Shown here one piece after another: positions 43,148-59,085 of a stretch of 64,000 bases of DNA. The stretch is from the IMG/VR virus record IMGVR_UViG_3300027782_000027, positions 124,001 to 188,000 of that record; one strand, written 5' to 3'. Position numbers and translations under genes: made by a program. Position 1 is the first letter of the stretch; each line of letters opens with the position of its first letter. Below the pieces are notes generated by a model. The model was not told the origin of the DNA. It ran no database searches and saw nothing but the letters and a program-made list of their open reading frames with translations.

Positions 43148-43176
43148 TTTTTTGATATTTATTTAAAAAACTATTA

Positions 43177-43545
43177 ATGGAATTTTTTATTAACAAAGGT
43201 GCAACACTGCCTGTTCTTAAAATGCAAGTGGTTAAAGATGGTATTGCTGACATAACAGAGTTTATGTCACTGATAGAAACCTCGTTGATTTATTTTTCCA
43301 TGATAGATGTTAAAACGGGAGGTTACAAGATTCTGAATAAGAAAGGAGGGTTTGTTGAAAAGACATTTATTGACCCAAACGCTGAGACAGAATACTATGT
43401 TTATTATAAATTCACTTCAAGCGATACAAGTAGAGAGGGACTTTATGAAGGAGAGTTTGTTTTTATCACTGATACAGGAACTTATATTTTACCAATCAGA
43501 GAAAAACTTACGATAAAAATTGGTAATAGTTACGTATCTATTTAA
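43177..43545 (+). CDS. Small Ig-like (BppU N-terminal-like) virion protein
   Basis: FFINKGATLPVL...YYKFTSSDTSREGLYEGEF...ILP. Paralogous to the N-domain of the next gene. Confidence 0.6.
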   Translation: MEFFINKGATLPVLKMQVVKDGIADITEFMSLIETSLIYFSMIDVKTGGYKILNKKGGFVEKTFIDPNAETEYYVYYKFTSSDTSREGLYEGEFVFITDTGTYILPIREKLTIKIGNSYVSI

Positions 43546-43546
43546 T

Positions 43547-44755: not shown

Positions 44756-44784
44756 AAAAAAGATAATTATTAGTAAGTAAAAAA

Positions 44785-47700
44785 ATGGCAATACCGTATC
44801 AAAATCCAATAAGTGCGTCCCAAATTACAGGACCTTTCAGTGTAGCGAGAACAAGCCCATACGGAACCAATTTTAATGTTTTAAATGTTGGTGGATGGCA
44901 AGAGGCGGCATACCTTACTAATTTAGGTTTAATATTTAGTGGGCAAGGACAACAACAATTAAGTGTTAATAATATACCTATTAATATTAACATTGGTAAC
45001 GGTACATTTTCTCCAACATATTTAACTTTAAATTCTGACAATTTCTCTTCGGGTAGAAGAAGATTGGGTATGATTGTTTGGGTTAATGAAACTGAAACAG
45101 CATATCAATATCAAATAGACAATTACAATGATTTATGGGATGCGGCGGTAAGTGCTAATTCTGTAACTCAATTATCTTACGAAACTATTGTAAAGAACAA
45201 TACACCTGAAGGTCAGGCATTTATTAATGCTTGGACAGGTTCAACTATTGAAGGTGTTAGTGGCGTAACAAGAGCAAATGCTCGTTGGAGAGTTTTTGCA
45301 CAAGGTACTGAATTAACGGGTGGTACTTATTTTTCAGGTACAAGTACATTAGAATTATATAATAGTGATGGAACTGTTATTTCTGTAACAGGTATTACGG
45401 CATCTGGTTCTAATGGTAGTTCTGGAACATCAGGTTCAAGTGGTTCATCAGGTAGTTCAGGTTCAAGTGGGTCTTCGGGAACTTCAGGTAGTAATGGTTC
45501 GTCAGGTAGTAGTGGAACAAGCGGAACAAGTGGAACATCGGGTAGTACAGGAACTAGTGGTTCATCAGGAAGTGTAGGTACAAGTGGTAGTTCGGGATTA
45601 AGTGGTGTTGACGGTACAAATGGTACTAGTGGTTCATCTGGAAGTGTAGGTACATCAGGAACTTCAGGGTCATCAGGAAGTTCAGGTACAGGTGGAACAT
45701 CAGGAACTTCAGGTACATCAGGAAGTACTGGAACTTCAGGTTCAAGTGGTAGTGTTGGGACTAGTGGTACATCAGGTTCAAGTGGTTCTTCAGGAAGTGT
45801 TGGTACGTCTGGTTCATCTGGAAGTGCAGGTACATCAGGAACTTCAGGGTCATCAGGAAGTTCAGGTACAAGCGGAACATCAGGAACTGGAGGAACTTCA
45901 GGTTCAAGTGGTAGTGTTGGGACTAGTGGTACATCAGGAACAAGTGGTTCTTCAGGTACATCAGGTAGTTCAGGTTCAAGTGGTTCATCGGGAAGTTCAG
46001 GTTCAAGTGGTTCATCGGGTACATCAGGTAGTACTGGTACTAGTGGTAGTAGTGGAACAAGCGGAACGTCGGGTTCATCAGGTTCTGCGGGAAGTAGTGG
46101 TTCATCAGGTAGTGTTGGAACATCTGGTTCAAGTGGTAGTTCAGGTAGTTCTGGTTCATCAGGTACATCTGGCTCAAGTGGTAGCTCTGGTTCAACAGGT
46201 TCGTCAGGTAGTAGTGGTATAACTGGGTCTTCAGGTACGAGTGGTAGTTCTGGCACATCAGGTTCATCTGGTAGTTCAGGTTCTTCAGGTTCATCTGGTA
46301 GTTCAGGTTCTTCAGGTAGTACTGGTTCATCAGGAACTAGCGGAACATCAGGAACATCAGGTACAAGTGGTAGTTCAGGTTCTACAGGAACATCGGGTTC
46401 TACAGGAACATCGGGTTCTACAGGAACATCGGGTTCATCAGGTAGTAGTGGCTCAAGTGGAAGTTCAGGATTGACAGGTTCATCAGGAACATCGGGTTCA
46501 TCAGGGACATCGGGTTCATCAGGTAGTTCTGGTTCAAGTGGTAGTAGCGGAAGTACAGGGTCTTCGGGCACAAGTGGTAGTTCTGGTACATCAGGTTCAT
46601 CAGGAAGTTCAGGTTCATCAGGTTCTAGCGGTAGTGTTGGAACTTCGGGAACAAGTGGTTCAAGTGGAAGTTCAGGTTCTTCAGGAAGTGTAGGAACATC
46701 AGGTACAAGTGGTAGTTCAGGTTCGTCTGGCTCAAGTGGAAATACAGGTTCAAGTGGAACGAGTGGTTCATCAGGTACATCTGGCTCAAGTGGTAGTTCA
46801 GGTTCGTCTGGCTCAAGTGGTTCAAGTGGAAGTTCAGGTTCTTCAGGAAGTGTAGGAACATCAGGTACAAGTGGTAGTTCAGGTTCTTCAGGTAGTTCAG
46901 GTGTTAATGGTTCTTCAGGGACTAGTGGTAGTTCGGGAACATCTGGTTCTTCAGGAAGTTCGGGTTCATCAGGTTCTAGTGGTAGTTCAGGAACATCTGG
47001 CTCAAGCGGGTCTTCTGGTTCAAGTGGAAGTACTGGTTCTTCAGGAAGTGCAGGTACATCGGGTAGTGTAGGAACTAGCGGTAGTTCTGGTTCATCTGGT
47101 TCTTCAGGTAGTACTGGCTCAAGTGGTACTTCAGGTTCATCAGGTAGTGTAGGTACTAGTGGTTCATCAGGTAGTGTAGGTACTAGTGGTTCATCAGGTA
47201 GCACTGGTTCAAGTGGTAGTAGCGGAAGTACAGGGTCTTCTGGTACAAGTGGGAGCTCAGGAACATCTGGTACTAGCGGTAGTTCTGGGTCATCTGGTTC
47301 AGTTGGTACAAGCGGTTCATCAGGTAGTGTTGGAACATCTGGTTCATCAGGTTCTGTTGGTACTTCAGGAACATCGGGTTCATCAGGTAGTACTGGTTCA
47401 AGTGGAAGTTCAGGAAGTAGTGGTAGTGTAGGAACAAGTGGTTCTTCAGGGACATCTGGCTCAACAGGTACTTCAGGAACATCAGGTTCAAGTGGGTCTT
47501 CAGGTAGTTCGGGTTCATCAGGAAGTTCAGGTACAAGCGGAACATCAGGTTCAGTAGGAACAAGTGGTTCATCGGGAAGTTCAGGGTCAACAGGAACTTC
47601 AGGTTCAAGTGGGTCTTCAGGTAGTTCAGGAAGTAGCGGAACATCTGGTTCTAGTGGAAGTGTTGGAACTTCTGGCACATCAGGAACAAGTGGTTCATCG

Positions 47701-50700
47701 GGAAGTTCTGGTTCTGCCGGTACAAGTGGAAGTGTAGGAACAAGTGGTACTTCAGGTTCATCTGGCTCAAGTGGAAGTTCAGGTTCAACAGGTAGTTCAG
47801 GTACTAGCGGAACATCTGGAACAAGTGGTTCATCAGGTTCTAGCGGTAGCGCTGGAAGCTCAGGAACGTCAGGTTCTAGCGGTAGCACAGGTTCAAGTGG
47901 TTCTACTGGCACGTCAGGTTCTTCAGGAACAAGTGGTTCTGTAGGTACAAGCGGAACATCTGGTTCCTCAGGAAGTGTAGGTACTTCAGGTACTAGTGGA
48001 AGCTCAGGAAGTGTAGGAACATCTGGTTCAAGTGGTACTACTGGTACCTCAGGAACATCAGGTAGTTCAGGTTCATCTGGTAGTGTTGGTACATCAGGAA
48101 CTTCGGGTACTAGCGGAACATCAGGTTCTAGCGGTTCGTCAGGAAATAGTGGAAGTTCAGGTACAAGTGGAACATCGGGTTCAACTGGGTCTTCAGGCTC
48201 AAGTGGTAGTTCGGGAAGTGTTGGTACATCAGGAAGTAGTGGTTCTTCAGGTTCTAGTGGTAGTACTGGAAGCTCAGGAAGTACAGGTACATCGGGTTCA
48301 AGTGGAACTTCAGGTTCTTCAGGTACTAGCGGAACATCGGGAACTAGTGGAAGTTCAGGAAGTGTAGGTACTTCAGGTACATCAGGAAGTTCTGGTTCAG
48401 TAGGAACATCGGGTACTAGTGGTAGTTCTGGTTCAGTAGGAACATCGGGAACTAGTGGTAGTTCTGGTTCGTCTGGTTCAGTTGGTACTAGCGGTTCTTC
48501 AGGAAGTGTTGGAACTAGTGGAACATCAGGTAGTTCAGGTTCAAGTGGTTCTAGCGGAGTATCAGGTTCATCGGGTTCTAGTGGTATTAGTGGAAGTTCA
48601 GGTACTTCAGGTACTAGTGGAACTTCAGGTTCAAGTGGTTCTACTGGTACGTCAGGTTCTAGCGGAAGTGCTGGAAGCTCAGGAAATAGTGGGACATCAG
48701 GTTCTTCAGGTAGTGTTGGAACATCTGGTACTAGCGGTTCGTCAGGTAGTGTAGGGACTAGCGGAACATCTGGTTCAAGTGGTAGTTCAGGAAATAGTGG
48801 AACATCAGGAACTAGTGGCTCATCGGGTAGTGTAGGAACATCAGGAACAAGTGGTACGTCAGGTAGTTCTGGTTCAAGTGGTAGTTCAGGAAGTGTAGGT
48901 ACTTCAGGTACTAGTGGTAGTTCAGGAAGTGTAGGAACATCTGGTTCAAGTGGCTCTACTGGTACGTCAGGTTCTAGCGGAAGTGCTGGAAGCTCAGGAA
49001 ATAGTGGAACATCTGGAACAAGTGGCAGTTCAGGTTCTTCTGGTTCAAGTGGTAGTACTGGTACGTCAGGTAGTTCGGGAAGTACAGGAACATCTGGCTC
49101 TTCAGGAAGTGTTGGTACATCAGGAACTAGTGGAACTAGTGGAACTTCAGGTAGTTCTGGTTCAGTAGGAACTTCAGGTACTAGTGGTAGCGTAGGAACA
49201 TCGGGTACATCAGGTAGTTCTGGTTCATCGGGAAGCAGTGGTTCTTCAGGTTCTAGCGGTAGTGCTGGAAGTTCAGGAACTAGTGGGTCTACAGGTTCAA
49301 GTGGAAGTAGTGGTTCTTCAGGAAGTGTTGGAACAAGTGGTTCTAGCGGAAGTACTGGTACATCAGGTAGTTCAGGAAGTGTTGGTACAAGTGGTTCTTC
49401 AGGAAGTACTGGAACATCAGGAACAAGTGGTAGTTCAGGTTCTGTGGGTACATCAGGTACTAGCGGTACGAGCGGAAGTTCTGGTTCAAGTGGAACTTCT
49501 GGTTCTTCGGGAAGTACTGGTACATCTGGTTCATCGGGTAGTGTAGGTACTTCAGGAACAAGTGGTTCATCTGGAAGTACGGGTACATCAGGTAGTGCTG
49601 GTTCTTCTGGCTCAAGTGGTAGTTCAGGTTCTTCAGGAAGTTCTGGAAGCGTTGGTACATCTGGAACTAGTGGTTCTTCAGGAAGTACAGGCACAAGTGG
49701 TACATCAGGTAGTTCAGGGTCAAGTGGAACTGGAGGTTCGTCAGGTTCAAGTGGAAGCACCGGAACCTCAGGAACATCAGGAAGTGTTGGAACATCAGGA
49801 ACGTCTGGTTCTTCAGGAAGTGTTGGTACGAGTGGAACATCGGGTTCATCAGGTAGTGTTGGAACATCTGGTTCTTCAGGTTCATCAGGAACAAGTGGAA
49901 CATCAGGTAGTTCTGGCTCTGTAGGTACTAGTGGTACATCAGGGTCTTCAGGAAGTGTGGGAACAAGTGGGACTAGCGGTACATCAGGAACTTCTGGTTC
50001 ATCAGGAAGTGTGGGAACTAGCGGTAGTTCGGGTAGTGTAGGTACTTCAGGAACTAGCGGTACATCAGGTTCTAGTGGAAGCGTTGGTACATCAGGTACG
50101 AGCGGTTCTTCAGGAAGTTATGGTTCAAGTGGTAGTTCAGGAAGCACAGGTACAAGTGGAACATCTGGTTCTTCAGGTACGACAGGTAGTTCGGGGAGTA
50201 GTGGTAGTTCAGGTTCTTCGGGTAGTGTTGGTACTTCAGGAAGTAGTGGTTCAAGTGGAACATCAGGGTATAGCGGAAGTAGTGGTAGTTCTGGCTCATC
50301 AGGAAGTGCTGGTACTTCAGGGGTTAACGGAAGTTCTGGAACATCAGGAAGTAGTGGTTCATCTGGGTCTTCAGGTTCTAGCGGTTCATCAGGAACGTCT
50401 GGCTCAAGCGGAAGTACTGGTTCATCTGGTTCATCTGGTTCATCTGGAAGTACGGGAACATCAGGGTCTAGCGGTTCAACAGGTACAAGTGGTACATCGG
50501 GTAGTGTAGGTACATCAGGTTCATCGGGAAGTTCTGGCTCATCAGGTTCTAGTGGAAGTGTTGGTACTTCTGGAACAAGTGGTTCTTCGGGAAGTACTGG
50601 TTCATCAGGTAGTTCAGGAACATCAGGAAGTACAGGTACATCAGGAACAAGTGGTAGTTCAGGTTCTGTGGGTACATCAGGTACCAGCGGTACGAGTGGA

Positions 50701-53700
50701 AGTTCTGGTTCTTCGGGAAGTAGTGGAACATCAGGAAGTTCTGGAAGCGTTGGTACATCAGGTACGAGCGGTTCTTCAGGAAGTTCTGGTTCATCAGGGA
50801 TATCTGGTTCAAGTGGTAGTTCAGGAAGCACAGGTACAAGTGGAACATCAGGTTCTTCAGGTAGTGTAGGAACTTCTGGTTCTTCAGGTAGTTCTGGTTC
50901 AGTAGGAACTTCAGGTACTAGTGGTACATCAGGAACATCGGGTTCATCGGGTAGCTCTGGCTCAACAGGCTCGTCAGGTAGTAGTGGAACTTCTGGTTCA
51001 TCAGGTTCAAGTGGTAGTGCTGGCTCATCTGGTAGTTCTGGAAGTACAGGAACATCAGGCACTAGCGGTAGTACTGGTTCAAGTGGTAGTAGTGGTACAT
51101 CAGGAAGTTCAGGTTCTTCGGGTTCTGTAGGTACATCAGGGACTGCGGGTACATCAGGAAGTACAGGTTCTAGTGGTAGTAGTGGTTCATCAGGTAGTGT
51201 GGGTACTTCAGGAACTAGTGGTTCGTCAGGTTCTAGCGGAAGCGCTGGAAGCTCAGGGACATCAGGTTCTTCAGGTACAAGTGGTACTTCGGGTTCTAGT
51301 GGTAGTACTGGAAGTTCAGGAACATCTGGCTCGTCAGGAAGTGTTGGTACATCAGGTTCTTCAGGAAGTACTGGAACTAGTGGCTCAAGTGGTAGTTCAG
51401 GAACCTCAGGTTCTTCTGGCTCAACAGGTTCAAGTGGTTCTTCAGGAAGTGCTGGTTCTAGTGGTAGTACAGGTTCATCAGGAACATCAGGGTCAAGTGG
51501 TTCGGTAGGTACTTCGGGGACTAGTGGAAGTTCAGGTAGTGTAGGAACATCTGGTTCAAGTGGGTCTTCAGGCTCTAGCGGAAGTGTTGGAACATCAGGT
51601 TCTAGCGGTTCTTCAGGAAGTTCTGGGTCATCAGGGTCTAGTGGAAGTGTTGGTACATCAGGTTCTTCGGGAAGTACTGGTACGTCAGGTTCAAGTGGTT
51701 CTACAGGAAGCTCTGGCTCAAGTGGTTCTACAGGAACTAGTGGAACTTCAGGTTCTTCAGGTAGTACAGGAACATCTGGTACGTCAGGTTCAAGCGGTAG
51801 TGTAGGTACATCAGGAACTAGTGGTAGTTCTGGTTCAGTTGGTACAAGTGGTACATCTGGCTCAAGTGGTAGTGTTGGTACATCTGGAACTTCGGGGTCA
51901 TCTGGAAGTGTTGGTACAAGCGGTTCTTCAGGAACTAGTGGGTCAAGTGGAAGTAGTGGTTCATCAGGTTCTACAGGAACTTCTGGTTCATCAGGAACAA
52001 GTGGTTCTTCAGGTAGTACAGGAACATCAGGTAGTGCTGGTTCTTCTGGCTCAAGTGGTAGTTCAGGTTCAAGTGGAAGTACTGGAACATCAGGTTCCTC
52101 AGGTTCAAGTGGTAGTACAGGTTCTTCAGGAAGTTCTGGAACGAGTGGTAGTTCAGGAACTAGTGGGTCTTCTGGTAATTCTGGTTCTTCAGGAACTAGC
52201 GGAACATCTGGAACAAGTGGTTCATCAGGTTCTAGCGGTAGCGCTGGAAGCTCAGGAACGTCAGGTTCTGTAGGTACGAGCGGAACATCAGGTTCTAGCG
52301 GTAGTACTGGTTCAAGTGGTTCGTCAGGTACTAGCGGAACTTCAGGTTCAAGTGGTTCATCTGGAAGTTCAGGGTCATCAGGAACATCTGGTTCTTCAGG
52401 TAGTACAGGTTCAAGTGGAACTAGTGGTTCTTCAGGAACATCTGGTACTAGCGGTAGTTCAGGAAGTTCTGGTTCATCGGGTAGTACAGGTACTTCAGGA
52501 AGCTCAGGCTCAAGCGGAACAAGTGGTTCTTCAGGGTCTAGCGGTTCATCGGGTTCTAGTGGAAGTTCAGGGTCATCTGGTAGTACAGGTTCAAGAGGGA
52601 CTAGCGGAACATCTGGAACAAGTGGTAGTTCAGGAACATCTGGTTCAAACGGTACATCAGGAAGTTCTGGTTCATCGGGTAGTAGTGGGAGTTCAGGTTC
52701 TGGTGGTACTTCAGGTTCATCAGGATTAAGTGGGGTTGATGGTACAAACGGTACTAGTGGTAGTTCAGGGACTAGTGGAACATCTGGTTCAAGTGGTTCA
52801 AGTGGTTCTTCAGGGTCTAGTGGTAGTGTAGGAACAAGCGGAACTTCTGGTTCTTCAGGAAGTAGTGGAAGTGCTGGGTCATCTGGTTCAAGTGGTTCGT
52901 CGGGTACATCAGGTGCTAATGGAAGCTCTGGTAGTTCAGGTTCAAGTGGTAGTTCAGGGACAAGTGGTTCGTCAGGTTCTAGCGGAAGTGCTGGAAGCTC
53001 AGGAAGTTCTGGTTCTGTTGGGACATCAGGTTCGTCAGGTACTTCAGGTTCAAGCGGTTCTTCAGGTAGTAGTGGCTCAAGTGGTAGTTCAGGAAGTTCT
53101 GGTTCTGCGGGTACTTCAGGTTCAAGTGGAAGTGCTGGAACTAGTGGTTCATCTGGTAGTTCAGGGTCTGCTGGTAGTTCAGGGTCAAGTGGAGTAACTG
53201 GTTCTTCAGGTACTAGCGGGTCTTCAGGAAGTTCTGGTAGTTCAGGTTCTAGTGGAAGTGTTGGAACTAGCGGTTCATCAGGTACAAGTGGTTCATCCGG
53301 CTCAAGTGGAAGTTCTGGTTCATCAGGAAGTTCTGGTTCAACAGGTTCATCAGGAAGTTCTGGTTCAACAGGTTCATCAGGAACAAGTGGTACGTCAGGT
53401 AGTAGCGGTTCTAGTGGTAGTACAGGGACTAGTGGTTCGTCAGGAAGTTCTGGCTCAGCTGGTACAAGCGGAAGTTCAGGTTCTACAGGTAGTAGTGGGT
53501 CTAGCGGAAGTGCGGGTTCTTCAGGAAGTGTAGGGACTAGTGGAACATCTGGTTCTAGTGGTAGTTCTGGTTCTAGTGGAAGTACGGGTAGTTCAGGTAC
53601 TAGCGGTAGTAGTGGTTCATCAGGAAGTTCTGGTTCCACAGGTTCTTCGGGAAGTAGTGGAACATCAGGTTCTGTAGGTTCATCAGGTACTAGTGGTTCT

Positions 53701-56700
53701 TCAGGTTCTAGTGGAAGTGCTGGAAGTTCAGGTTCAACTGGTACATCTGGTTCTTCAGGTTCAGTAGGAACAAGTGGAACTTCTGGTTCAAGTGGTAGTT
53801 CAGGTTCTTCAGGTTCAGTAGGAACAAGTGGAACTTCTGGTTCAAGTGGTAGTTCAGGTTCTTCTGGAACTAGTGGAAGTGTTGGTACAAGTGGTTCATC
53901 TGGAACATCAGGTTCTAGTGGTAGTTCAGGAAGTTCTGGTTCATCAGGAAGTTCGGGTTCCACAGGTTCTTCGGGAACATCAGGAAGTACTGGAAGTTCA
54001 GGGTCTAGTGGAAGTACTGGTAGTTCAGGGACTAGTGGTTCGTCAGGGTCTAGCGGAAGTTCAGGTACATCAGGTACTTCTGGTTCAAGTGGGTCTTCAG
54101 GTTCTAGTGGAAGTGTTGGAACATCAGGTACGAGCGGTTCGTCAGGTTCTAGTGGTAGCACTGGAAGCTCAGGAAGTGCGGGTACATCAGGTAGTTCAGG
54201 TTCTGTAGGTACAAGTGGTAGTTCTGGAAGCTCAGGAAGTTCTGGTTCATCAGGTTCTGCGGGAAGTGCTGGTACATCAGGAACATCAGGTTCATCGGGA
54301 AGTAGTGGTAGTTCAGGGTCATCTGGTTCAGCAGGTACATCAGGTGCTAATGGAAGTTCTGGTACTTCAGGAACATCTGGTTCTTCAGGTTCAAGTGGAA
54401 GTAGTGGTTCATCAGGAAGTGTGGGTACATCTGGTTCATCTGGTACATCTGGTACATCAGGAACATCTGGTTCAAGTGGCTCAGCAGGTTCTAGCGGAAG
54501 TGCTGGAAGCTCAGGAAGTAGCGGTTCATCTGGTACATCAGGAGCTAATGGAAGTAGTGGAACATCTGGTTCTTCAGGTTCAAGTGGTAGTAGTGGTAGT
54601 TCAGGTTCAGCTGGTTCTTCTGGAACATCAGGTTCTAGCGGAAGCTCAGGAAGTACTGGTTCATCTGGTTCTTCTGGTACTTCAGGAAGTAGTGGAAGTT
54701 CTGGAACATCAGGTTCAAGCGGTTCATCAGGTAGTTCAGGAAGTGTTGGAACAAGTGGAAGTTCTGGAACTTCAGGTTCAAGTGGTTCGTCAGGTTCTAG
54801 TGGTAGTGCTGGAAGCTCTGGTACGTCAGGTACTAGTGGTTCATCAGGAACTTCAGGTTCAAGTGGTTCGTCAGGTTCTAGTGGTAGTACTGGAAGCTCA
54901 GGAAGTACTGGTACAAGTGGAAGTTCTGGTTCATCAGGTAGTTCAGGAAGTGTTGGTACAAGTGGAAGTTCAGGTTCTGCCGGAACGTCTGGTTCATCAG
55001 GAAGTTCGGGTTCAAGCGGTAGTAGTGGAAGTTCAGGTTCTACTGGTTCAAGAGGAACATCAGGAACATCAGGTAGTAGTGGTACAAGTGGAACATCAGG
55101 TACTTCTGGTTCATCAGGTTCTAGCGGAAGTGCTGGTTCATCAGGTACATCGGGAGCTAACGGAAGTTCAGGTACAAGTGGTACTTCAGGAAGTAGTGGA
55201 AGTTCAGGGTCTAGCGGTAGTGCTGGAAGTTCAGGTTCTACTGGTACAAGTGGCTCTTCAGGAAGTTCTGGTACAAGTGGCTCTTCAGGAAGTTCTGGTT
55301 CATCGGGTAGTAGTGGAAGTGCGGGGTCATCTGGTTCATCAGGTACATCAGGTGCTAATGGAAGTTATGGTACTTCAGGTACTAGTGGAAGTTCAGGGTC
55401 TAGCGGTAGTGCTGGAAGTTCTGGTTCTGTAGGTACAAGTGGCTCATCAGGTTCTAGCGGAAGCGCTGGAAGTTCAGGAAGTACTGGCTCAAGTGGTAGT
55501 TCTGGTTCGTCAGGAACAAGTGGTGCTAATGGTAGTTCAGGAACGTCTGGTTCAAGTGGCTCATCTGGTTCTTCAGGAAGTAGTGGTAGTTCTGGTTCTG
55601 TTGGAACATCAGGTTCTAGCGGTTCATCAGGAAGTTCTGGTTCTTCAGGAAGTACAGGTTCAAGTGGAACATCAGGTACTTCTGGTTCGTCAGGTTCTAG
55701 CGGTTCATCAGGAAGTAGTGGTAGTGCAGGTTCTTCAGGAACATCAGGGGCTAACGGTTCTTCAGGTACAAGTGGTTCGTCAGGTTCTAGCGGTAGTACT
55801 GGAAGCTCAGGAAGTAGTGGTACATCGGGTGCTAATGGAAGCAGCGGAACATCAGGAAGTTCAGGGTCTAGTGGTTCTTCAGGAACTGCTGGCTCAAGTG
55901 GATTATCAGGAAACGACTCTTCTAACTCAGGTAGATGGAGATATAATGGAACAGGTACTACACCTGCAGCAACATTCTTTCAGACAGATAGTACAACAAT
56001 ATCTTCAATTACTAATGTCTATATAAACATTGATGATATAAATTCCACATCTTATGCTTCGTGGTTTTCTGGAATAGATACCATACAGGCTCTTGGTAAT
56101 ACTGTTTATTTACAAATCACACAAGTAGGTTCTAACAATATTATTGGTATATGGGATGTTGCAGGAATTACAGTAACCGGTAGTGTTTATAGATGGATAT
56201 TCAAAGGTAATATTGTTGCAAATGGAACTTTATCCAGTACAGAATATACAATATCATGGGTATTTAATGGTCTTAATGGTTCATCTGGTACGAGCGGAAG
56301 TTCTGGAACATCAGGTTCAAGCGGAAGTTCGGGCAGTTCAGGTTCGTCAGGTAATACTGGAAGTTCAGGAACATCAGGTTCATCAGGAACTAGCGGTTCA
56401 TCAGGTAGTGCTGGCTCAAGTGGAAGTTCAGGTAATACAGGTTCTTCGGGTACAAGTGGTAGTTCAGGGTCTTCAGGTAGTGTAGGTACATCTGGAACGA
56501 GTGGAACATCGGGTACTAGTGGAAGTTCAGGTTCATCAGGAAGTGCTGGTACGAGTGGAAGTTCAGGAACATCGGGTTCAAGTGGTAGTTCAGGTTCGTC
56601 AGGTAATACTGGAAGTTCAGGTTCTTCAGGAACATCAGGGTCCAGTGGTAGTTCAGGAAGTACAGGTTCTTCAGGTTCAAGTGGAACATCAGGAAGTTCA

Positions 56701-59085
56701 GGGTCTAGTGGTTCTTCAGGTTCTAGTGGTAGTGCTGGAAGTTCTGGTACATCAGGTGCTAATGGTAGTTCAGGAACATCTGGCTCAAGCGGTTCATCTG
56801 GCTCAAGTGGAAGTAGTGGTAGTTCTGGTTCAGTTGGAACATCAGGTTCTAGTGGAAGTAGTGGTAGTTCAGGGTCTTCAGGAAGTACTGGTTCAAGAGG
56901 AACAAGCGGTTCTTCAGGAACATCGGGAAGCTCAGGTTCAAGTGGTTCATCAGGTACTTCAGGTTCTAACGGAAGTTCAGGAACATCAGGAAGTGCTGGT
57001 TCAAGTGGTAGTTCAGGTTCATCAGGTTCAAGTGGAACATCAGGTTCTAATGGTAGCTCTGGTACATCAGGTAGTTCTGGTTCAAGTGGTAGTAGTGGTT
57101 CTAGCGGTAGTGCTGGTACTTCAGGTTCAGTAGGGACAAGTGGCTCTTCAGGAAGTGCGGGTAGTTCAGGGTCAAGTGGAAATACAGGCTCTTCGGGTAC
57201 TAGCGGTTCATCAGGAACATCAGGTTCTTCTGGCTCAAGTGGCTCGTCAGGGTCTGGTGGAAGCTCAGGTACATCGGGTAGTAGTGGAACATCAGGGTCT
57301 TCAGGCTCAAGTGGAAGTTCAGGTAGTACAGGTTCATCGGGTTCATCTGGTATTACAGGTTCTTCAGGAACTAGTGGTAGTTCAGGTACATCAGGAAGTT
57401 CGGGTTCATCAGGTAGTAGTGGAAGCACTGGCTCAAGTGGTACTGGAGGTTCTTCAGGAACATCAGGTTCTTCTGGTTCAAGTGGAAGCTCAGGTTCTTC
57501 GGGTAATAGCGGTTCATCGGGAACTTCTGGGTCAAGTGGAACATCAGGTTCTTCTGGCTCTTCAGGTAGTTCTGGGTCTAGCGGAAGTGCTGGCTCAAGT
57601 GGTAGTTCAGGTTCATCGGGTATTACTGGAAGTAGTGGAACAAGTGGTTCTTCTGGCTCAAGCGGAAGTTCAGGAACATCGGGTTCTTCGGGTACTTCAG
57701 GGTCAAGTGGTTCTTCAGGAAGTAGCGGAAGTTCGGGTAATACAGGTTCTTCTGGAACTAGCGGTTCATCAGGTAGTGCTGGTTCAAGCGGAAGTTCGGG
57801 TAATACAGGTTCTTCTGGAACTAGCGGTTCATCAGGTAGTGCTGGTTCAAGCGGAAGTTCGGGTAATACAGGTTCTTCGGGTACAAGTGGTAGTTCTGGA
57901 ACATCGGGGTCAACAGGTTCTTCAGGAAGTTCTGGGATTACTGGTTCCTCAGGTACTTCTGGTTCAGGTTCTGCTGGTTCATCAGGTTCTAGCGGAAGTG
58001 GGTCATCAGGAACAAGTGGATTAGATGGTATAAGTGGAACATCTGGCTCAAGTGGTATTACTGGTTCATCAGGTACTTCAGGTTCTGGCTCATCAGGAAG
58101 TTCAGGGTCTAGTGGAAGTACGGGTTCGTCAGGAACATCAGGTTCGTCAGGAACATCAGGAAGTTCAGGTTCTAGTGGTAGTTCTGGTTCAAGTGGGAGT
58201 ACTGGTTCAAGAGGAACTTCTGGAAGTCAAGGTAACAAAGGAGGTCTTCAGTATATCTATGGTAATGGAGCCGGTACAGCACCTTCTTCAGGTCAATTTA
58301 GTTATAATGGTGCAGGTTCTTCAGTTTATGATTTGAAATTTAATGTAACAACCGCGGATTCTGCAAATATTAGTGATTATTTTTTCAATTTAGTTGGAAA
58401 AAGTGGGATTGTATATTTGATTTTCAATTTAAATGGTTCAAACAAAATTGATATTTATAGCTTTAATAACGTTTCGGTAAGTGGTAGTGATTATCTTTTT
58501 ACAGGAGCTTTAGATACAAATGCTGGAGATACAACACTTACAACTAGTGATTTATGTGCAATTACCATAATTGTTAATGGAGCATCAGGTGCTAATGGTA
58601 GTTCAGGAACTTCAGGTTCAAGTGGTAGTAGTGGAAGTACTGGTTCAAGAGGAACATCGGGTTCTTCAGGTTCAAGCGGAAGTTCTGGTTCATCAGGGAC
58701 TAGCGGTTCATCAGGAACTTCAGGTTCTAGTGGAAGTTCAGGTTCTAGTGGAAGTTCTGGTTCAAGTGGTTCTTCAGGAACTTCAGGTTCAAGTGGAAGT
58801 ACAGGTTCAAGAGGAACATCTGGAAGCTCAGGAACTAGTGGTACTTCAGGTTCATCGGGTTCTTCGGGTACTTCAGGTTCAAATGGTTCATCTGGTACAA
58901 GTGGTAGTTCAGGTTCATCGGGTAGTTCAGGTTCATCAGGGACTAGCGGTTCATCAGGAAGTTCTGGAATTACTGGCTCTTCAGGAACATCAGGTTCAGG
59001 TTCATCAGGAACTAGTGGAGCTGCGGGCGGAACATTCACATTAGGAATTGTTTACACAACCGCAAACAATTTTAACTTTATATAA
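44785..59085 (+). CDS. Giant Gly-X-Y (G-S/T-S) repeat fibre-like protein, 4766 aa
   Basis: Uninterrupted 14.3-kb ORF with a ~205-aa N-domain, roughly 4300 aa of Gly-X-Y triplets in three blocks, two ~120-aa globular inserts and a short C-terminal tail. Confidence 0.85.
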   Translation: MAIPYQNPISASQITGPFSVARTSPYGTNFNVLNVGGWQEAAYLTNLGLIFSGQGQQQLSVNNIPININIGNGTFSPTYLTLNSDNFSSGRRRLGMIVWVNETETAYQYQIDNYNDLWDAAVSANSVTQLSYETIVKNNTPEGQAFINAWTGSTIEGVSGVTRANARWRVFAQGTELTGGTYFSGTSTLELYNSDGTVISVTGITASGSNGSSGTSGSSGSSGSSGSSGSSGTSGSNGSSGSSGTSGTSGTSGSTGTSGSSGSVGTSGSSGLSGVDGTNGTSGSSGSVGTSGTSGSSGSSGTGGTSGTSGTSGSTGTSGSSGSVGTSGTSGSSGSSGSVGTSGSSGSAGTSGTSGSSGSSGTSGTSGTGGTSGSSGSVGTSGTSGTSGSSGTSGSSGSSGSSGSSGSSGSSGTSGSTGTSGSSGTSGTSGSSGSAGSSGSSGSVGTSGSSGSSGSSGSSGTSGSSGSSGSTGSSGSSGITGSSGTSGSSGTSGSSGSSGSSGSSGSSGSSGSTGSSGTSGTSGTSGTSGSSGSTGTSGSTGTSGSTGTSGSSGSSGSSGSSGLTGSSGTSGSSGTSGSSGSSGSSGSSGSTGSSGTSGSSGTSGSSGSSGSSGSSGSVGTSGTSGSSGSSGSSGSVGTSGTSGSSGSSGSSGNTGSSGTSGSSGTSGSSGSSGSSGSSGSSGSSGSSGSVGTSGTSGSSGSSGSSGVNGSSGTSGSSGTSGSSGSSGSSGSSGSSGTSGSSGSSGSSGSTGSSGSAGTSGSVGTSGSSGSSGSSGSTGSSGTSGSSGSVGTSGSSGSVGTSGSSGSTGSSGSSGSTGSSGTSGSSGTSGTSGSSGSSGSVGTSGSSGSVGTSGSSGSVGTSGTSGSSGSTGSSGSSGSSGSVGTSGSSGTSGSTGTSGTSGSSGSSGSSGSSGSSGTSGTSGSVGTSGSSGSSGSTGTSGSSGSSGSSGSSGTSGSSGSVGTSGTSGTSGSSGSSGSAGTSGSVGTSGTSGSSGSSGSSGSTGSSGTSGTSGTSGSSGSSGSAGSSGTSGSSGSTGSSGSTGTSGSSGTSGSVGTSGTSGSSGSVGTSGTSGSSGSVGTSGSSGTTGTSGTSGSSGSSGSVGTSGTSGTSGTSGSSGSSGNSGSSGTSGTSGSTGSSGSSGSSGSVGTSGSSGSSGSSGSTGSSGSTGTSGSSGTSGSSGTSGTSGTSGSSGSVGTSGTSGSSGSVGTSGTSGSSGSVGTSGTSGSSGSSGSVGTSGSSGSVGTSGTSGSSGSSGSSGVSGSSGSSGISGSSGTSGTSGTSGSSGSTGTSGSSGSAGSSGNSGTSGSSGSVGTSGTSGSSGSVGTSGTSGSSGSSGNSGTSGTSGSSGSVGTSGTSGTSGSSGSSGSSGSVGTSGTSGSSGSVGTSGSSGSTGTSGSSGSAGSSGNSGTSGTSGSSGSSGSSGSTGTSGSSGSTGTSGSSGSVGTSGTSGTSGTSGSSGSVGTSGTSGSVGTSGTSGSSGSSGSSGSSGSSGSAGSSGTSGSTGSSGSSGSSGSVGTSGSSGSTGTSGSSGSVGTSGSSGSTGTSGTSGSSGSVGTSGTSGTSGSSGSSGTSGSSGSTGTSGSSGSVGTSGTSGSSGSTGTSGSAGSSGSSGSSGSSGSSGSVGTSGTSGSSGSTGTSGTSGSSGSSGTGGSSGSSGSTGTSGTSGSVGTSGTSGSSGSVGTSGTSGSSGSVGTSGSSGSSGTSGTSGSSGSVGTSGTSGSSGSVGTSGTSGTSGTSGSSGSVGTSGSSGSVGTSGTSGTSGSSGSVGTSGTSGSSGSYGSSGSSGSTGTSGTSGSSGTTGSSGSSGSSGSSGSVGTSGSSGSSGTSGYSGSSGSSGSSGSAGTSGVNGSSGTSGSSGSSGSSGSSGSSGTSGSSGSTGSSGSSGSSGSTGTSGSSGSTGTSGTSGSVGTSGSSGSSGSSGSSGSVGTSGTSGSSGSTGSSGSSGTSGSTGTSGTSGSSGSVGTSGTSGTSGSSGSSGSSGTSGSSGSVGTSGTSGSSGSSGSSGISGSSGSSGSTGTSGTSGSSGSVGTSGSSGSSGSVGTSGTSGTSGTSGSSGSSGSTGSSGSSGTSGSSGSSGSAGSSGSSGSTGTSGTSGSTGSSGSSGTSGSSGSSGSVGTSGTAGTSGSTGSSGSSGSSGSVGTSGTSGSSGSSGSAGSSGTSGSSGTSGTSGSSGSTGSSGTSGSSGSVGTSGSSGSTGTSGSSGSSGTSGSSGSTGSSGSSGSAGSSGSTGSSGTSGSSGSVGTSGTSGSSGSVGTSGSSGSSGSSGSVGTSGSSGSSGSSGSSGSSGSVGTSGSSGSTGTSGSSGSTGSSGSSGSTGTSGTSGSSGSTGTSGTSGSSGSVGTSGTSGSSGSVGTSGTSGSSGSVGTSGTSGSSGSVGTSGSSGTSGSSGSSGSSGSTGTSGSSGTSGSSGSTGTSGSAGSSGSSGSSGSSGSTGTSGSSGSSGSTGSSGSSGTSGSSGTSGSSGNSGSSGTSGTSGTSGSSGSSGSAGSSGTSGSVGTSGTSGSSGSTGSSGSSGTSGTSGSSGSSGSSGSSGTSGSSGSTGSSGTSGSSGTSGTSGSSGSSGSSGSTGTSGSSGSSGTSGSSGSSGSSGSSGSSGSSGSTGSRGTSGTSGTSGSSGTSGSNGTSGSSGSSGSSGSSGSGGTSGSSGLSGVDGTNGTSGSSGTSGTSGSSGSSGSSGSSGSVGTSGTSGSSGSSGSAGSSGSSGSSGTSGANGSSGSSGSSGSSGTSGSSGSSGSAGSSGSSGSVGTSGSSGTSGSSGSSGSSGSSGSSGSSGSAGTSGSSGSAGTSGSSGSSGSAGSSGSSGVTGSSGTSGSSGSSGSSGSSGSVGTSGSSGTSGSSGSSGSSGSSGSSGSTGSSGSSGSTGSSGTSGTSGSSGSSGSTGTSGSSGSSGSAGTSGSSGSTGSSGSSGSAGSSGSVGTSGTSGSSGSSGSSGSTGSSGTSGSSGSSGSSGSTGSSGSSGTSGSVGSSGTSGSSGSSGSAGSSGSTGTSGSSGSVGTSGTSGSSGSSGSSGSVGTSGTSGSSGSSGSSGTSGSVGTSGSSGTSGSSGSSGSSGSSGSSGSTGSSGTSGSTGSSGSSGSTGSSGTSGSSGSSGSSGTSGTSGSSGSSGSSGSVGTSGTSGSSGSSGSTGSSGSAGTSGSSGSVGTSGSSGSSGSSGSSGSAGSAGTSGTSGSSGSSGSSGSSGSAGTSGANGSSGTSGTSGSSGSSGSSGSSGSVGTSGSSGTSGTSGTSGSSGSAGSSGSAGSSGSSGSSGTSGANGSSGTSGSSGSSGSSGSSGSAGSSGTSGSSGSSGSTGSSGSSGTSGSSGSSGTSGSSGSSGSSGSVGTSGSSGTSGSSGSSGSSGSAGSSGTSGTSGSSGTSGSSGSSGSSGSTGSSGSTGTSGSSGSSGSSGSVGTSGSSGSAGTSGSSGSSGSSGSSGSSGSTGSRGTSGTSGSSGTSGTSGTSGSSGSSGSAGSSGTSGANGSSGTSGTSGSSGSSGSSGSAGSSGSTGTSGSSGSSGTSGSSGSSGSSGSSGSAGSSGSSGTSGANGSYGTSGTSGSSGSSGSAGSSGSVGTSGSSGSSGSAGSSGSTGSSGSSGSSGTSGANGSSGTSGSSGSSGSSGSSGSSGSVGTSGSSGSSGSSGSSGSTGSSGTSGTSGSSGSSGSSGSSGSAGSSGTSGANGSSGTSGSSGSSGSTGSSGSSGTSGANGSSGTSGSSGSSGSSGTAGSSGLSGNDSSNSGRWRYNGTGTTPAATFFQTDSTTISSITNVYINIDDINSTSYASWFSGIDTIQALGNTVYLQITQVGSNNIIGIWDVAGITVTGSVYRWIFKGNIVANGTLSSTEYTISWVFNGLNGSSGTSGSSGTSGSSGSSGSSGSSGNTGSSGTSGSSGTSGSSGSAGSSGSSGNTGSSGTSGSSGSSGSVGTSGTSGTSGTSGSSGSSGSAGTSGSSGTSGSSGSSGSSGNTGSSGSSGTSGSSGSSGSTGSSGSSGTSGSSGSSGSSGSSGSAGSSGTSGANGSSGTSGSSGSSGSSGSSGSSGSVGTSGSSGSSGSSGSSGSTGSRGTSGSSGTSGSSGSSGSSGTSGSNGSSGTSGSAGSSGSSGSSGSSGTSGSNGSSGTSGSSGSSGSSGSSGSAGTSGSVGTSGSSGSAGSSGSSGNTGSSGTSGSSGTSGSSGSSGSSGSGGSSGTSGSSGTSGSSGSSGSSGSTGSSGSSGITGSSGTSGSSGTSGSSGSSGSSGSTGSSGTGGSSGTSGSSGSSGSSGSSGNSGSSGTSGSSGTSGSSGSSGSSGSSGSAGSSGSSGSSGITGSSGTSGSSGSSGSSGTSGSSGTSGSSGSSGSSGSSGNTGSSGTSGSSGSAGSSGSSGNTGSSGTSGSSGSAGSSGSSGNTGSSGTSGSSGTSGSTGSSGSSGITGSSGTSGSGSAGSSGSSGSGSSGTSGLDGISGTSGSSGITGSSGTSGSGSSGSSGSSGSTGSSGTSGSSGTSGSSGSSGSSGSSGSTGSRGTSGSQGNKGGLQYIYGNGAGTAPSSGQFSYNGAGSSVYDLKFNVTTADSANISDYFFNLVGKSGIVYLIFNLNGSNKIDIYSFNNVSVSGSDYLFTGALDTNAGDTTLTTSDLCAITIIVNGASGANGSSGTSGSSGSSGSTGSRGTSGSSGSSGSSGSSGTSGSSGTSGSSGSSGSSGSSGSSGSSGTSGSSGSTGSRGTSGSSGTSGTSGSSGSSGTSGSNGSSGTSGSSGSSGSSGSSGTSGSSGSSGITGSSGTSGSGSSGTSGAAGGTFTLGIVYTTANNFNFI
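45406..59025 (+). repeat. Degenerate 9-bp-period coding repeat (GSS/GTS/GSV/GST/GSA triplets)
   Basis: A GGN codon occurs at every third codon, with interruptions at about 55909-56271 and 58231-58581. Confidence 0.97.

What the first reader, a model, noticed from the sequence alone, without database searches (positions are those of the whole stretch)
44785..59085. 4766-aa proline-free, almost uncharged Gly-X-Y protein: possible micrometre-long fibre
Seen: about 1400 Gly-X-Y triplets, almost all GSS, GTS, GST, GSV or GSA, with no Pro and almost no charged residues in the repeats. Classical and bacterial collagens are stabilised by Pro/Hyp or charge pairs, and neither is available here. Inference: at about 0.29 nm per residue, an extended triple helix would be ~1.2 micrometres long, much larger than a capsid. 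It may need O-glycosylation for stability, as glycosylated Thr provides in some vent-worm collagen. Alternatively it could fold as a polyglycine-II bundle like snow-flea antifreeze protein, whose regular hydroxyl surface could order water or bind ice.
Basis: partly seen in the sequence, partly recalled or inferred. Interest (0 to 1): 0.8.

Follow-up and report, generated by a model that had tools for sequence, protein, structure and literature searches.

The report
Giant proline-free collagen-like phage fibre
A freshwater jumbo phage encodes a real 4,766-residue fibre protein whose stalk is 1,431 Gly-X-Y triplets made almost only of Gly, Ser and Thr, so if it forms a collagen triple helix it does so without any of the usual stabilisers and would be over a micrometre long.

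Summary
Window 44785-59085 (+) is one ORF of 4,766 aa with 1,431 Gly-X-Y triplets, 1,168 of them uninterrupted. The triplets hold 0 Pro, 0 KGE/KGD and 11 charged residues; Ser/Thr fill 92% of X/Y positions.

The length is unlikely to be an assembly artefact. No 99-mer repeats inside the ORF. Three independent contigs give the same 14,301 nt with 0-3 SNPs and no indels. No long read was found.

Gly is under purifying selection: 0 replacements against 14 synonymous changes, versus 18/27 at X+Y. All indels between strains are multiples of 9 nt.

The genome is a roughly 240-kb freshwater jumbo phage. The protein is modular:
- An N-terminal anchor domain, shared with about 290 phage fibre-type protein clusters and with a short paralog in the window.
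- Three collagen-like segments.
- Two related beta-sandwich knobs, whose fold recurs in viral collagen-repeat proteins.

Relatives carry 0 to more than 946 triplets. Best reading: a trimeric collagen-like virion fibre of extreme length and composition. Glycosylation is plausible because GT60 lies upstream, but that module is conserved in relatives that lack this gene. A polyglycine-II or ice-binding fold is not supported. This is a new variant of a known kind.

The parts
44785..59085 (+). Giant fibre gene, 4,766 aa (about 391 kDa, pI 4.6)
   Evidence: Nearly identical gene of the same length in three IMG/VR contigs.
44785..45405 (+). N-terminal anchor domain (aa 1-207), always N-terminal in its family
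   Evidence: 29 related loci at 47-100% identity. 291 cluster representatives in 1.84 billion proteins, always at residues 1 to about 210. Distal parts of other members include Peptidase_S74 and DUF2793, which are phage fibre domains. AF2 model unusable, pLDDT 41.
45406..55917 (+). Collagen-like segment CL1: 1,168 uninterrupted Gly-X-Y triplets (about 1.0 micrometre if triple-helical)
55918..56268 (+). Knob domain D1 (aa 3712-3828), beta-sandwich with one helix
   Evidence: 18 related loci, always flanked by Gly-X-Y. AF2 pLDDT 81.8, pTM 0.77. Fold recurs in viral collagen-repeat proteins, TM about 0.7. No significant PDB match.
56269..58248 (+). Collagen-like segment CL2: 189 + 10 + 17 triplets separated by two short register breaks
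58249..58578 (+). Knob domain D2 (aa 4489-4598), diverged copy of D1
   Evidence: hhalign probability 93%, E 2.6e-7 against the D1 profile. hmmsearch E 1.7e-9. Atlas look-alikes at 0.95-0.96 are phage clusters with PF01391.
58579..59001 (+). Collagen-like segment CL3: 47 triplets
59002..59082 (+). 27-aa C-terminal tail (one register break, then a short hydrophobic beta-like end)
35985..36974 (+). Short paralog (329 aa): same N-terminal anchor (42% identity) plus a compact C-terminal head, no repeat
   Evidence: Atlas look-alikes are phage fibre clusters: Mtd_N, C1q, lambda Stf repeat, BclA_C+Collagen.
38128..39372 (+). GT60-family glycosyltransferase homolog (candidate polypeptide O-GlcNAc transferase)
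   Evidence: PF11397 1.1e-68, 232.7 bits. phrog_24687 1.9e-168. 45-47% identity to Xanthomonas/Stenotrophomonas jumbo phage proteins. 507 relatives in viral contigs. Family function from PMC8724618.
40917..41480 (+). Weak GT2-like gene
   Evidence: PF00535 E 4.4e-4, below the curated cut-off
41477..43147 (+). HtrL/YibB-like putative glycosyltransferase with a second GT-like region
   Evidence: PF09612 8.7e-13. phrog_842 1e-4. Syntenic with GT60 in 64 of 68 clade loci.
43520..44755 (+). Upstream partner gene with a Thr/Pro linker. It is the conserved neighbour of the fibre slot
   Evidence: In L066 the homolog extends to a 1,085-aa PT-linker/LRR-like protein.

Best explanation
The gene encodes a virion fibre of a ~240-kb freshwater jumbo phage, of the tail-fibre class. 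The conserved 207-aa N-terminal domain anchors it to the particle. Three chains are proposed to wind into a collagen-type triple helix along 1,431 Gly-X-Y triplets. Two related beta-sandwich knobs (D1, D2) interrupt the stalk, giving beads on a string. These knobs probably act as trimerisation and registration nodes, and possibly as binding heads.

The stalk has no Pro and no charge pairs. Any helix would therefore have to be held by the Ser/Thr hydroxyl-water network, the cooperativity of a very long homotrimer at lake temperatures, and perhaps O-glycosylation by phage glycosyltransferases. Stalk length changes between strains by gain and loss of whole triplets. The likely use is long-range capture of host cells or particles.

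Shown: the gene, its composition, its length in several assemblies, selection on Gly and on the triplet register, its modular architecture, and homology of the anchor and knobs to phage fibre proteins.

Inferred: trimer and triple helix, virion attachment, glycosylation and function.
For: Gene and repeat.

Phage context:
- RNR, DnaB, UvsX, SSB and a gp6-like baseplate wedge, all on the + strand.
- A 240,759-bp IMG/VR contig.
- Freshwater and lake metagenomes from 13 studies.

Length:
- The longest exact internal repeat is 92 nt and no 99-mer is repeated.
- There is no long high-identity self-match.
- Three contigs give an identical length with 0, 3 and 1 SNPs.
- Exact tiles of even depth occur in unrelated runs, including a 2022 study.

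Selection:
- Gly codons show 14 synonymous and 0 replacement changes. X+Y show 27 synonymous and 18 replacement changes, Fisher p = 0.003.
- Indels are 9, 18, 27, 54 and 144 nt only, and 9-nt indels are seen in read data.
- The DNA is about 93% of the way to fully scrambled synonymous coding.

Fibre identity:
- PHROG collagen-like tail-fibre families match at 1e-47 to 1e-25.
- The anchor family is always N-terminal. Other members end in Peptidase_S74 or DUF2793.
- The short paralog resembles Mtd_N, C1q and Stf fibre proteins.
- The D1 fold recurs in collagen-repeat phage and giant-virus proteins and in cyanophage tail-fibre and baseplate-connector proteins.
- D2 look-alikes include T4 gp9/10_N + collagen clusters.

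Modular relatives have CL segments of 8 to 1,168 triplets and swapped knobs.

Precedent: prophage collagen-like side-tail proteins are experimentally trimeric triple helices with a trimerisation domain (PMC3368898).
Against: - No experiment shows that Pro-free, charge-free (Gly-Ser-Ser)n forms a triple helix. (Gly-Pro-Thr)10 is a random coil unless glycosylated (PMC11923368).
- Salt bridges, argued there to be a general folding aid, are absent here.
- No long read spans the gene, and Logan contigs only tile it in 200-940-nt pieces.
- The N-terminal domain has no match to a characterised baseplate or capsid attachment domain.
- There is no recognisable C-terminal receptor-binding domain.
- Virion presence is untested.
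- Only 8 of the 150 best anchor-family members carry Gly-X-Y at all, so the collagen stalk is a minority solution.
- The GT module is not specific to this gene.
Confidence: 0.6

Rival explanations
1. The stalk is not a triple helix. It is a flexible, intrinsically disordered Ser/Gly tether, possibly a heavily O-glycosylated mucin-like bottle-brush. The strict Gly period would then come mainly from the 9-nt repeat mechanism.
For: The stalk has no Pro, no charge pairs and low-propensity residues. The GT60 family initiates mucin-type glycosylation of Ser/Thr-rich domains. Slippage on 9-nt units would by itself give indels in multiples of 9.
Against: Gly takes 0 of 14 (0 of 16 against L007) replacements while X and Y positions change freely. 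The DNA is strongly codon-scrambled, so the period is old and maintained at the protein level. A disordered linker has no need for Gly at 1,168 of 1,168 third positions. The knobs are those that accompany collagen repeats in other viral proteins.
Confidence: 0.2
2. The 14.3-kb length is an assembly artefact, either a chimeric join of strain alleles or an inflated repeat. The real gene would be about the size of the 2,435-aa relative.
For: Many related contigs end inside the repeat. Close relatives are half as long. No long read was available. The three concordant contigs may come from related samples and the same assembler.
Against: No 99-mer is repeated, and 94% of 31-mer positions are unique. 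There is no long near-identical internal duplication. The three assemblies carry different SNPs but the same length. Run X1 holds 80% of the sampled words of a 10-kb stretch. Exact tiles have uniform depth of 10-17, and an exact 941-nt piece beyond the region shared with the short allele occurs in an unrelated 2022 run.
Confidence: 0.07
3. The repeat folds as a polyglycine-II helix bundle, like snow-flea antifreeze protein or the gp38 adhesin sandwich. That would present a flat hydroxyl surface that binds ice or ordered water.
For: The Gly-X-X period and hydroxyl-rich side chains fit, and the habitat is freshwater lakes that can freeze. PGII domains are known in phage adhesins (my own knowledge, not tested here).
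Against: No periodicity beyond 3 residues could mark turns. The strongest non-3 peak is below 10x the mean, against 75-280x for period 3. Gly is confined to one position in three. Runs of hundreds of triplets have no loop-forming residues. Pfam Collagen and collagen-associated knobs fit better.
Confidence: 0.04
4. The protein is not part of the virion. It would be released at lysis or displayed by the infected cell, for example as a matrix, net or decoy, or for exclusion of other phages.
For: Virion presence is untested, there is no identified attachment partner, and the size is extreme.
Against: There is no signal peptide-like N-terminus. The N-terminal domain is shared with proteins that carry classic fibre and tailspike C-termini. 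The gene sits among structural-type genes: a LamG virion protein, Gly_rich_2 minor-tail-like paralogs, and a baseplate wedge upstream.
Confidence: 0.06

Closest known systems
Phage collagen-like tail-fibre / side-tail proteins (PF01391-bearing; e.g. E. coli O157 prophage EPclA/B, PMC3368898; PHROG 6320, 5073, 1806)
   Same: Tailed-phage gene. N-terminal phage-fibre domain, then a Gly-X-Y stalk, then globular trimer-type domains. EPclA is experimentally a trimeric triple helix with a dumbbell shape. Strong profile matches.
   Different: EPcl and typical viral collagens have 22-48% Pro at X and 30-38% charged residues. This protein has 0% and under 0.5%. Their stalks are tens of triplets long, against 1,431 here. 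The anchor and knob domains here are different families with no Pfam model.
BclA exosporium nap glycoprotein of the Bacillus cereus group
   Same: Collagen-like region rich in Thr and O-glycosylated. Homotrimer with a globular head. Length polymorphism of the repeat sets filament length (reviewed in PMC8968730; PMC10470788). The family here also varies from 0 to 1,431 triplets. The short paralog has BclA_C/C1q-like look-alikes.
   Different: BclA repeats are mostly GPT, so they contain Pro. BclA is bacterial, has well under 100 triplets (my recollection, not checked here) and ends in a BclA_C domain, which the giant protein lacks.
Vent-worm (Riftia/Alvinella) cuticle collagen
   Same: Micrometre-scale collagen molecules. 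Galactosylated Thr at Y replaces Hyp as the stabiliser (Mann et al. 1996, as cited in PMC11923368).
   Different: Animal protein that still uses Pro at X. The glycosylation is experimentally shown there and only inferred here.
Giant-virus collagen-like fibril proteins (Mimivirus, Klosneuvirus, Indivirus)
   Same: Virus-encoded collagen repeats modified by virus-encoded enzymes (PMC8968730). The D1 knob fold recurs in Klosneuvirus, Indivirus and Marseillevirus collagen-repeat proteins at TM 0.69-0.74.
   Different: Those are eukaryotic viruses. Mimivirus uses Lys hydroxylation and glycosylation. No sequence-level homology was shown.
Snow-flea antifreeze protein / polyglycine-II bundles
   Same: Three-residue Gly period and small polar side chains.
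   Different: Those bundles need short helices joined by regular turns and more than one Gly per triplet. Neither is present here.

Membership tests
Collagen triple-helix repeat proteins (PF01391 / IPR008160) | Gly at every third residue over 6 or more contiguous triplets | tested here: met
   1,431 triplets, longest run 1,168
Collagen triple-helix repeat proteins (PF01391 / IPR008160) | Profile score above the curated threshold | tested here: met
   156 bits against a cut-off of 27.2 for a 300-aa slice
Collagen triple-helix repeat proteins (PF01391 / IPR008160) | Evolutionary constraint on Gly and on the triplet register | tested here: met
   0 of 14 Gly replacements against 18 of 45 at X/Y, p = 0.003. 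All indels are multiples of 9 nt.
Collagen triple-helix repeat proteins (PF01391 / IPR008160) | Actual homotrimeric triple helix (CD, melt, trimer mass) | not testable with these tools
   Only monomer prediction was available, and there is no experiment
Collagen triple-helix repeat proteins (PF01391 / IPR008160) | Usual stabilisers: Pro/Hyp or Lys-Glu/Asp salt bridges (typical rather than strictly defining) | tested here: not met
   0 Pro, 0 KGE/KGD, 11 charged residues in 4,293. Baselines in PMC3368898 and PMC11923368.
Collagen triple-helix repeat proteins (PF01391 / IPR008160) | Adjacent non-collagen trimerisation or nucleation domain | tested here: inconclusive
   D1 and D2 are confident beta-sandwiches whose fold accompanies collagen repeats in many viral proteins. 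Their oligomeric state was not tested.
Phage tail fibre proteins | N-terminal domain shared with other fibre proteins that have different distal parts | tested here: met
   291 representatives with the domain always at residues 1 to about 210. Distal Peptidase_S74, DUF2793 and LVIVD domains. A paralog in the window.
Phage tail fibre proteins | Location in a structural gene module | tested here: inconclusive
   LamG virion protein, Gly_rich_2 minor-tail-like genes and a hypervariable adhesin slot are adjacent. The baseplate wedge is 25 kb upstream. Many neighbours have no annotation.
Phage tail fibre proteins | Distal receptor-binding domain | tested here: inconclusive
   Only a 27-aa tail follows CL3. 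D2 lies 168 aa from the end. No known receptor-binding family matched.
Phage tail fibre proteins | Presence in virions | not testable with these tools
   Uncultured phage
BclA-type glycosylated collagen-like filaments | C-terminal BclA_C / C1q-like head | tested here: not met
   No such domain in the giant protein. Only the short paralog has C1q/BclA_C look-alikes.
BclA-type glycosylated collagen-like filaments | O-glycosylation of repeat Thr/Ser | not testable with these tools
   GT60, HtrL-like and GT2-like genes lie upstream, but the module also occurs without the gene
Polyglycine-II bundle antifreeze proteins | Short PGII helices joined by regularly spaced turns, with Gly at more than one position per triplet | tested here: not met
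   No period beyond 3 residues. Gly at X or Y in only 10 of 2,862 positions.
CAZy GT60 polypeptide alpha-GlcNAc transferases (gene 38128-39372) | PF11397 match above threshold | tested here: met
   232.7 bits against a cut-off of 21
CAZy GT60 polypeptide alpha-GlcNAc transferases (gene 38128-39372) | Transfer of GlcNAc to Ser/Thr of this fibre | not testable with these tools
   Inference from the family function only (PMC8724618)

The most novel reading that the evidence does not exclude
The stalk is a genuine homotrimeric collagen triple helix that is stable with no Pro, no Hyp and no salt bridges. It would be held only by Ser/Thr hydroxyls, bare or O-GlcNAc-modified by the phage GT60 enzyme. 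That would be a third natural mode of triple-helix stabilisation. It would build a fibre of at least 1 micrometre, roughly ten capsid diameters and the longest appendage known on a phage, whose length is tuned between strains by triplet indels.
Probability: 0.3. Interest if true: 0.85.

Novelty: new variant of a known kind. Interest (0 to 1): 0.62.

Why it matters
For collagen biophysics this is a natural test case. It is a 3,504-residue uninterrupted Gly-X-Y domain under clear selection for Gly, yet it lacks every accepted stabiliser. Recent work proposes Lys-Glu/Asp salt bridges as a general folding code for long collagens, viral ones included (PMC11923368), and this protein has none. Short recombinant segments would show directly whether Ser/Thr-only triplets can form a triple helix, and whether O-glycosylation is required.

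For phage biology, a micrometre-scale fibre of variable length on an abundant freshwater jumbo phage would imply adsorption by long-range tethering. It would also mark a hypervariable fibre slot worth tracking in lake viromes.

For materials work, a Pro-free, uncharged, hydroxyl-rich collagen encoded by non-repetitive DNA is an attractive scaffold.

Tried and rejected
- Near-identical DNA and N-terminal-domain protein searches in GenBank phages: no match.
- XacN1 ORF325 (3,313 aa, near its GT cluster) as a possible relative: ordinary composition and no similarity.
- N-terminal domain structure prediction: pLDDT 41, unusable. PDB sequence searches for the anchor, paralog, D1 profile, GT60 and HtrL-like gene: nothing significant.
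- D1 against PDB folds: the best hits were viral fibre heads, but at E 0.02-0.3 and TM 0.2-0.33, so not significant.
- Nanopore run search: none listed.
- The read-laying gave only 200-940-nt contig tiles, so it confirms local sequence but not long-range continuity.
- Promoter, terminator and SD scans: nothing above chance.
- PHROG scan of seven large neighbours: no hits.
- L029 and L030 were first read as repeat-less orthologs. They are orthologs of the paralog g35985.
- L012's 1,295-aa ORF is a 1-nt frameshift near a contig end, not a length variant.
- Database search for other giant proteins using a repeat slice: 4 hits, none with a long strict Gly-X-Y run. The search is limited by words and composition, and it did not return the window's own protein, so it is weak evidence of rarity.
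- Literature searches for a comparable phage protein or a Pro-free natural collagen: none found in the held library.
- The first two Atlas calls failed because the machine was busy. One paper reading was malformed.
Full report
OBSERVATION

Window 44785-59085 on the + strand is a single ATG-initiated ORF of 4,766 codons with no internal stop. Ser (2,157), Gly (1,493) and Thr (589) make up 89% of it. A register scan finds five Gly-X-Y runs:
- aa 208-3711: 1,168 triplets with no interruption at all
- aa 3829-4395: 189 triplets
- aa 4406-4435: 10 triplets
- aa 4438-4488: 17 triplets
- aa 4599-4739: 47 triplets

That makes 1,431 triplets, 90% of the protein. GSS (711), GTS (418), GST (88), GSV (87) and GSA (47) dominate. 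The 4,293 repeat residues contain no Pro, no KGE or KGD triplet, and only 11 charged residues. Ser plus Thr occupy 92% of X and Y positions. A 300-residue slice scores 156 bits on Pfam Collagen, where the cut-off is 27.2.

The protein is modular: a 207-aa N-terminal domain, two internal globular domains (D1 at aa 3712-3828, D2 at aa 4489-4598) and a 27-aa tail. Three one-residue register breaks occur in the last quarter. The long antisense ORFs (45327-49760 and 50118-54161) are by-products of the repeat.

IS THE LENGTH REAL?

The repeat is repetitive as protein but not as DNA.
- The longest exact internal repeat is 92 nt. No 99-mer occurs twice, and only 882 of 14,268 31-mer positions are non-unique.
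- The best off-diagonal self-alignments are 71-77% identical over at most 1 kb, which is the compositional background.
- The same protein encoded with one codon per residue would have 11,825 non-unique 31-mer positions. Random synonymous encoding gives 8 +/- 9.

So the array is old and codon-scrambled with a few recent small duplications. There is nothing for an assembler to inflate.

The window corresponds to IMG/VR contig 3300027782_000027 (240,759 bp). Two other contigs from different assemblies carry the whole gene at the same length, with 3 SNPs and 1 SNP and no indel. Public freshwater and lake metagenome runs from 13 studies contain it. One run holds 80% of the sampled words of a 10-kb stretch.

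Laying contigs of four runs on 48500-54499 gave exact tiles of 200-940 nt. Depth was even (10-17) in run X1. An unrelated 2022 run gave an exact 941-nt piece, and some strains showed 9-nt indels. No piece spans the gene and no Nanopore run could be listed, so long-range continuity rests on the concordant short-read assemblies. I put the artefact reading at about 7%.

SELECTION ON THE COLLAGEN REGISTER

A 98%-identical relative (L005, 2,435 aa) is collinear with the first ~3.3 kb of the gene and then diverges. In 276 aligned triplets:
- Gly codons carry 14 synonymous and 0 replacement differences.
- X carries 16 synonymous and 10 replacement differences.
- Y carries 11 synonymous and 8 replacement differences.
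- Fisher p = 0.003. A second relative gives 16/0, 14/3 and 15/5.

Every indel between these alleles is a multiple of 9 nt: 9, 18, 27, 54 or 144. Slippage on 9-nt units could explain the indels on its own. It cannot explain the absence of Gly replacements in codon-scrambled DNA.

There is no periodicity beyond three residues. The non-3 peaks stay below 10x the mean power, against 75-280x for period 3. That removes the regular turns a polyglycine-II hairpin bundle would need.

WHAT KIND OF GENOME AND GENE

All genes in the window run on the + strand at about 30% GC. The 48% GC of the repeat reflects Gly and Ser codons. Recognisable genes include ribonucleotide reductase, a DnaB-like helicase, a UvsX-like recombinase, SSB and a gp6-like baseplate wedge. 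This is a tailed jumbo phage.

The N-terminal domain:
- It is found in 29 related viral loci at 47-100% identity.
- An exhaustive profile search finds it in 291 cluster representatives, always at residues 1 to about 210.
- Other members carry distal Peptidase_S74 (the intramolecular chaperone of phage fibres and spikes), DUF2793 or LVIVD propellers.
- Only 8 of the best 150 have any Gly-X-Y run, at most 62 triplets, and those runs are all Pro-free and Ser/Thr-rich.
- The window itself holds a short paralog (35985-36974, 329 aa). Its anchor is 42% identical and it has a compact head whose Atlas look-alikes are Mtd_N, C1q, lambda Stf-repeat and BclA_C/collagen clusters of phages.

The knobs:
- D1 is conserved in 18 loci and always embedded between Gly-X-Y segments.
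- Its AF2 model is confident (pLDDT 81.8, pTM 0.77).
- The fold has no significant PDB match. It matches 41 predicted viral structures at E < 1e-3 and TM about 0.7. Most are annotated as collagen triple-helix repeat proteins of uncultured tailed phages, cyanophage tail-fibre or baseplate-connector proteins, and Klosneuvirus, Indivirus and Marseillevirus proteins.
- D2 is a diverged copy of D1: hhalign 93%, E 2.6e-7, and hmmsearch 1.7e-9. Its look-alikes include T4 gp9/10_N-plus-collagen clusters.

Relatives show the same construction kit in other arrangements:
- L005: anchor-CL658/31-D2-CL11
- L010: anchor-CL21-D1-CL486-other head
- L024: anchor-CL372-domain X-CL282-D1-CL292..., more than 3,337 aa and running off the contig
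- L027: five short CL segments between four different domains

The gene sits in a variable slot. In the nearest relative without it, that position holds a 1,085-aa protein with Thr/Pro linkers and LRR-like repeats.

GLYCOSYLATION

Between 1.6 and 6.7 kb upstream lie three candidate genes:
- A PF11397 (CAZy GT60) homolog at 233 bits.
- A weak GT2-like gene.
- An HtrL/YibB-like putative glycosyltransferase with a second GT-like region.

GT60 enzymes are the polypeptide alpha-GlcNAc transferases that start mucin-type O-glycosylation on Ser/Thr-rich domains in protists (PMC8724618).

The association is loose, though. GT60 has 507 relatives in viral contigs. In the best 80 loci only 13 have a Gly-X-Y run of 20 or more triplets within 10 kb. 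GT60, the HtrL-like gene, g43177 and g43520 form a conserved module irrespective of the fibre gene. The 64%-identity group has long Pro-free repeats but no GT within 10 kb upstream. Thr/Pro linkers in neighbouring proteins (35193-35357, 43982-44026, 62640-62681) are near GT60 in 50 of 68 clade loci and are an equally good acceptor. I rate glycosylation of the stalk at roughly one in three.

HOW IT MOST LIKELY WORKS

The best-supported model is a homotrimeric virion fibre. The N-terminal anchor is on the particle, the stalk is collagen-like, and D1 and D2 serve as registration or trimerisation nodes and possibly binding heads.

Experimental precedent exists for prophage collagen-like side-tail proteins. 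They are trimeric triple helices with a separate trimerisation domain and a dumbbell shape (PMC3368898).

At 0.286 nm per residue, CL1 would be 1.0 micrometre, CL2 0.19 and CL3 0.04, for a total of 1.23 micrometres. Stabilisation would have to come from Ser/Thr hydroxyl hydration, from cooperativity over thousands of residues at lake temperature, and possibly from glycans. This part is inference.

Function is inferred by analogy with other long phage filaments: long-range capture of hosts or particles, with reach tuned by triplet indels.

COMPARISON WITH WHAT IS KNOWN

Collagen-like phage fibres are a known kind, and prokaryotic collagen-like polypeptides of up to about 2,000 triplets, with many interruptions, have been noted (PMC11923368). 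Three things are unusual here:
- The uninterrupted run. Its 1,168 triplets compare with about 330 in human fibrillar chains and 1,380 residues in collagen VII.
- The composition. Viral collagens average 22% Pro and 35% Asp/Glu at X and 38% Arg/Lys at Y (PMC3368898, Table 4). Here the figures are 0, 0 and 0.5%.
- The complete lack of the salt-bridge triplets proposed as a general folding aid.

Thr-rich bacterial collagens (BclA) and vent-worm cuticle collagen use glycosylated Thr but keep Pro at X. (Gly-Pro-Thr)10 is a random coil unless glycosylated, so whether this stalk can fold at all is an open and testable question.

VERDICT

This is a real, selected, extreme member of the phage collagen-like fibre class, and a new variant of a known kind. 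The triple-helix and micrometre-fibre inferences are plausible but unproven. The glycosylation idea has a concrete candidate enzyme but a weak genomic link. The polyglycine-II and ice-binding idea is not supported. Interest 0.62.

Noticed in passing
window 59733-60629, 60642-61520, 61530-62408: Three tandem paralogous Gly-rich genes (292-298 aa, Pfam Gly_rich_2 PF21722). All end in (I/V)I(T/Q)CW, and they have weak PHROG matches to minor tail and tail-fibre-assembly families. They raise GC to 47% at 60-62 kb.
   Followed up: partly
window 35193-35357, 43982-44026, 62640-62681: Thr/Pro-rich linkers (TPTPSITPS-type) in three neighbouring proteins. Similar linkers lie near the GT60 gene in 50 of 68 related loci, which makes them an alternative target for the phage glycosyltransferases.
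   Followed up: partly
window 34971-36974 and 43520-59085: A duplicated two-gene cassette. A PT-linker protein (g34971 / g43520) is followed by a protein with the same N-terminal anchor (the 329-aa g35985 / the giant ORF). g43177 also resembles the N-terminus of g43520 (29% identity, E 2e-13).
   Followed up: partly
window 55918-56268 (D1); BFVD hits: The D1 beta-sandwich fold is shared by collagen-repeat proteins of tailed phages and of giant eukaryotic viruses (Klosneuvirus, Indivirus, Marseillevirus) but has no solved structure. It looks like an undescribed collagen-associated knob domain.
   Followed up: partly
L027 aa 968-1033 vs window aa ~175-207: The last ~35 residues of the anchor domain (LTGGTYFS.TS.LELYNS.G..I.VTGIT) recur inside a relative, directly in front of another Gly-X-Y segment. 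This may be a small pre-collagen nucleation unit.
   Followed up: no
window 45406-55917: The triplet GSV is followed by GTS in 83 of 84 cases and preceded by GSS in 74 of 84. That is a conserved GSS-GSV-GTS motif with no regular spacing.
   Followed up: no
window 38128-44755; loci L055-L134: GT60, the HtrL-like GT, g43177 and g43520 form a conserved syntenic module in a large clade of freshwater jumbo-phage contigs (507 GT60 relatives, contigs up to 322 kb). The slot after it holds highly variable adhesin-like genes, for example a 1,085-aa PT-linker/LRR-like protein in L066.
   Followed up: partly
window 45327-49760 and 50118-54161, minus strand: Antisense ORFs of 1,477 and 1,347 aa (Pro/Glu/Leu-rich translations). 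They are artefacts of the stop-free repeat and should not be called as genes.
   Followed up: yes
window 1856-8053 and 19645-25236: Two further very large ORFs (2,065 and 1,863 aa) have no PHROG match at all. The second follows the baseplate wedge gene directly.
   Followed up: no
L012 (IMGVR_UViG_3300031787_000060), near locus 13.9 kb: A 1-nt difference from the otherwise identical L010 truncates the fibre ORF to 1,295 aa close to the contig end. This is probably an assembly error, not a real short allele.
   Followed up: partly
L056-L058, L061-L064 at about 5.9-6.4 kb (about 4 kb upstream of GT60): Close relatives carry a second, short Pro-free Gly-X-Y run (34-51 triplets). It lies in the paralog position (the g35985 homolog region) and is absent from the window.
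   Followed up: no
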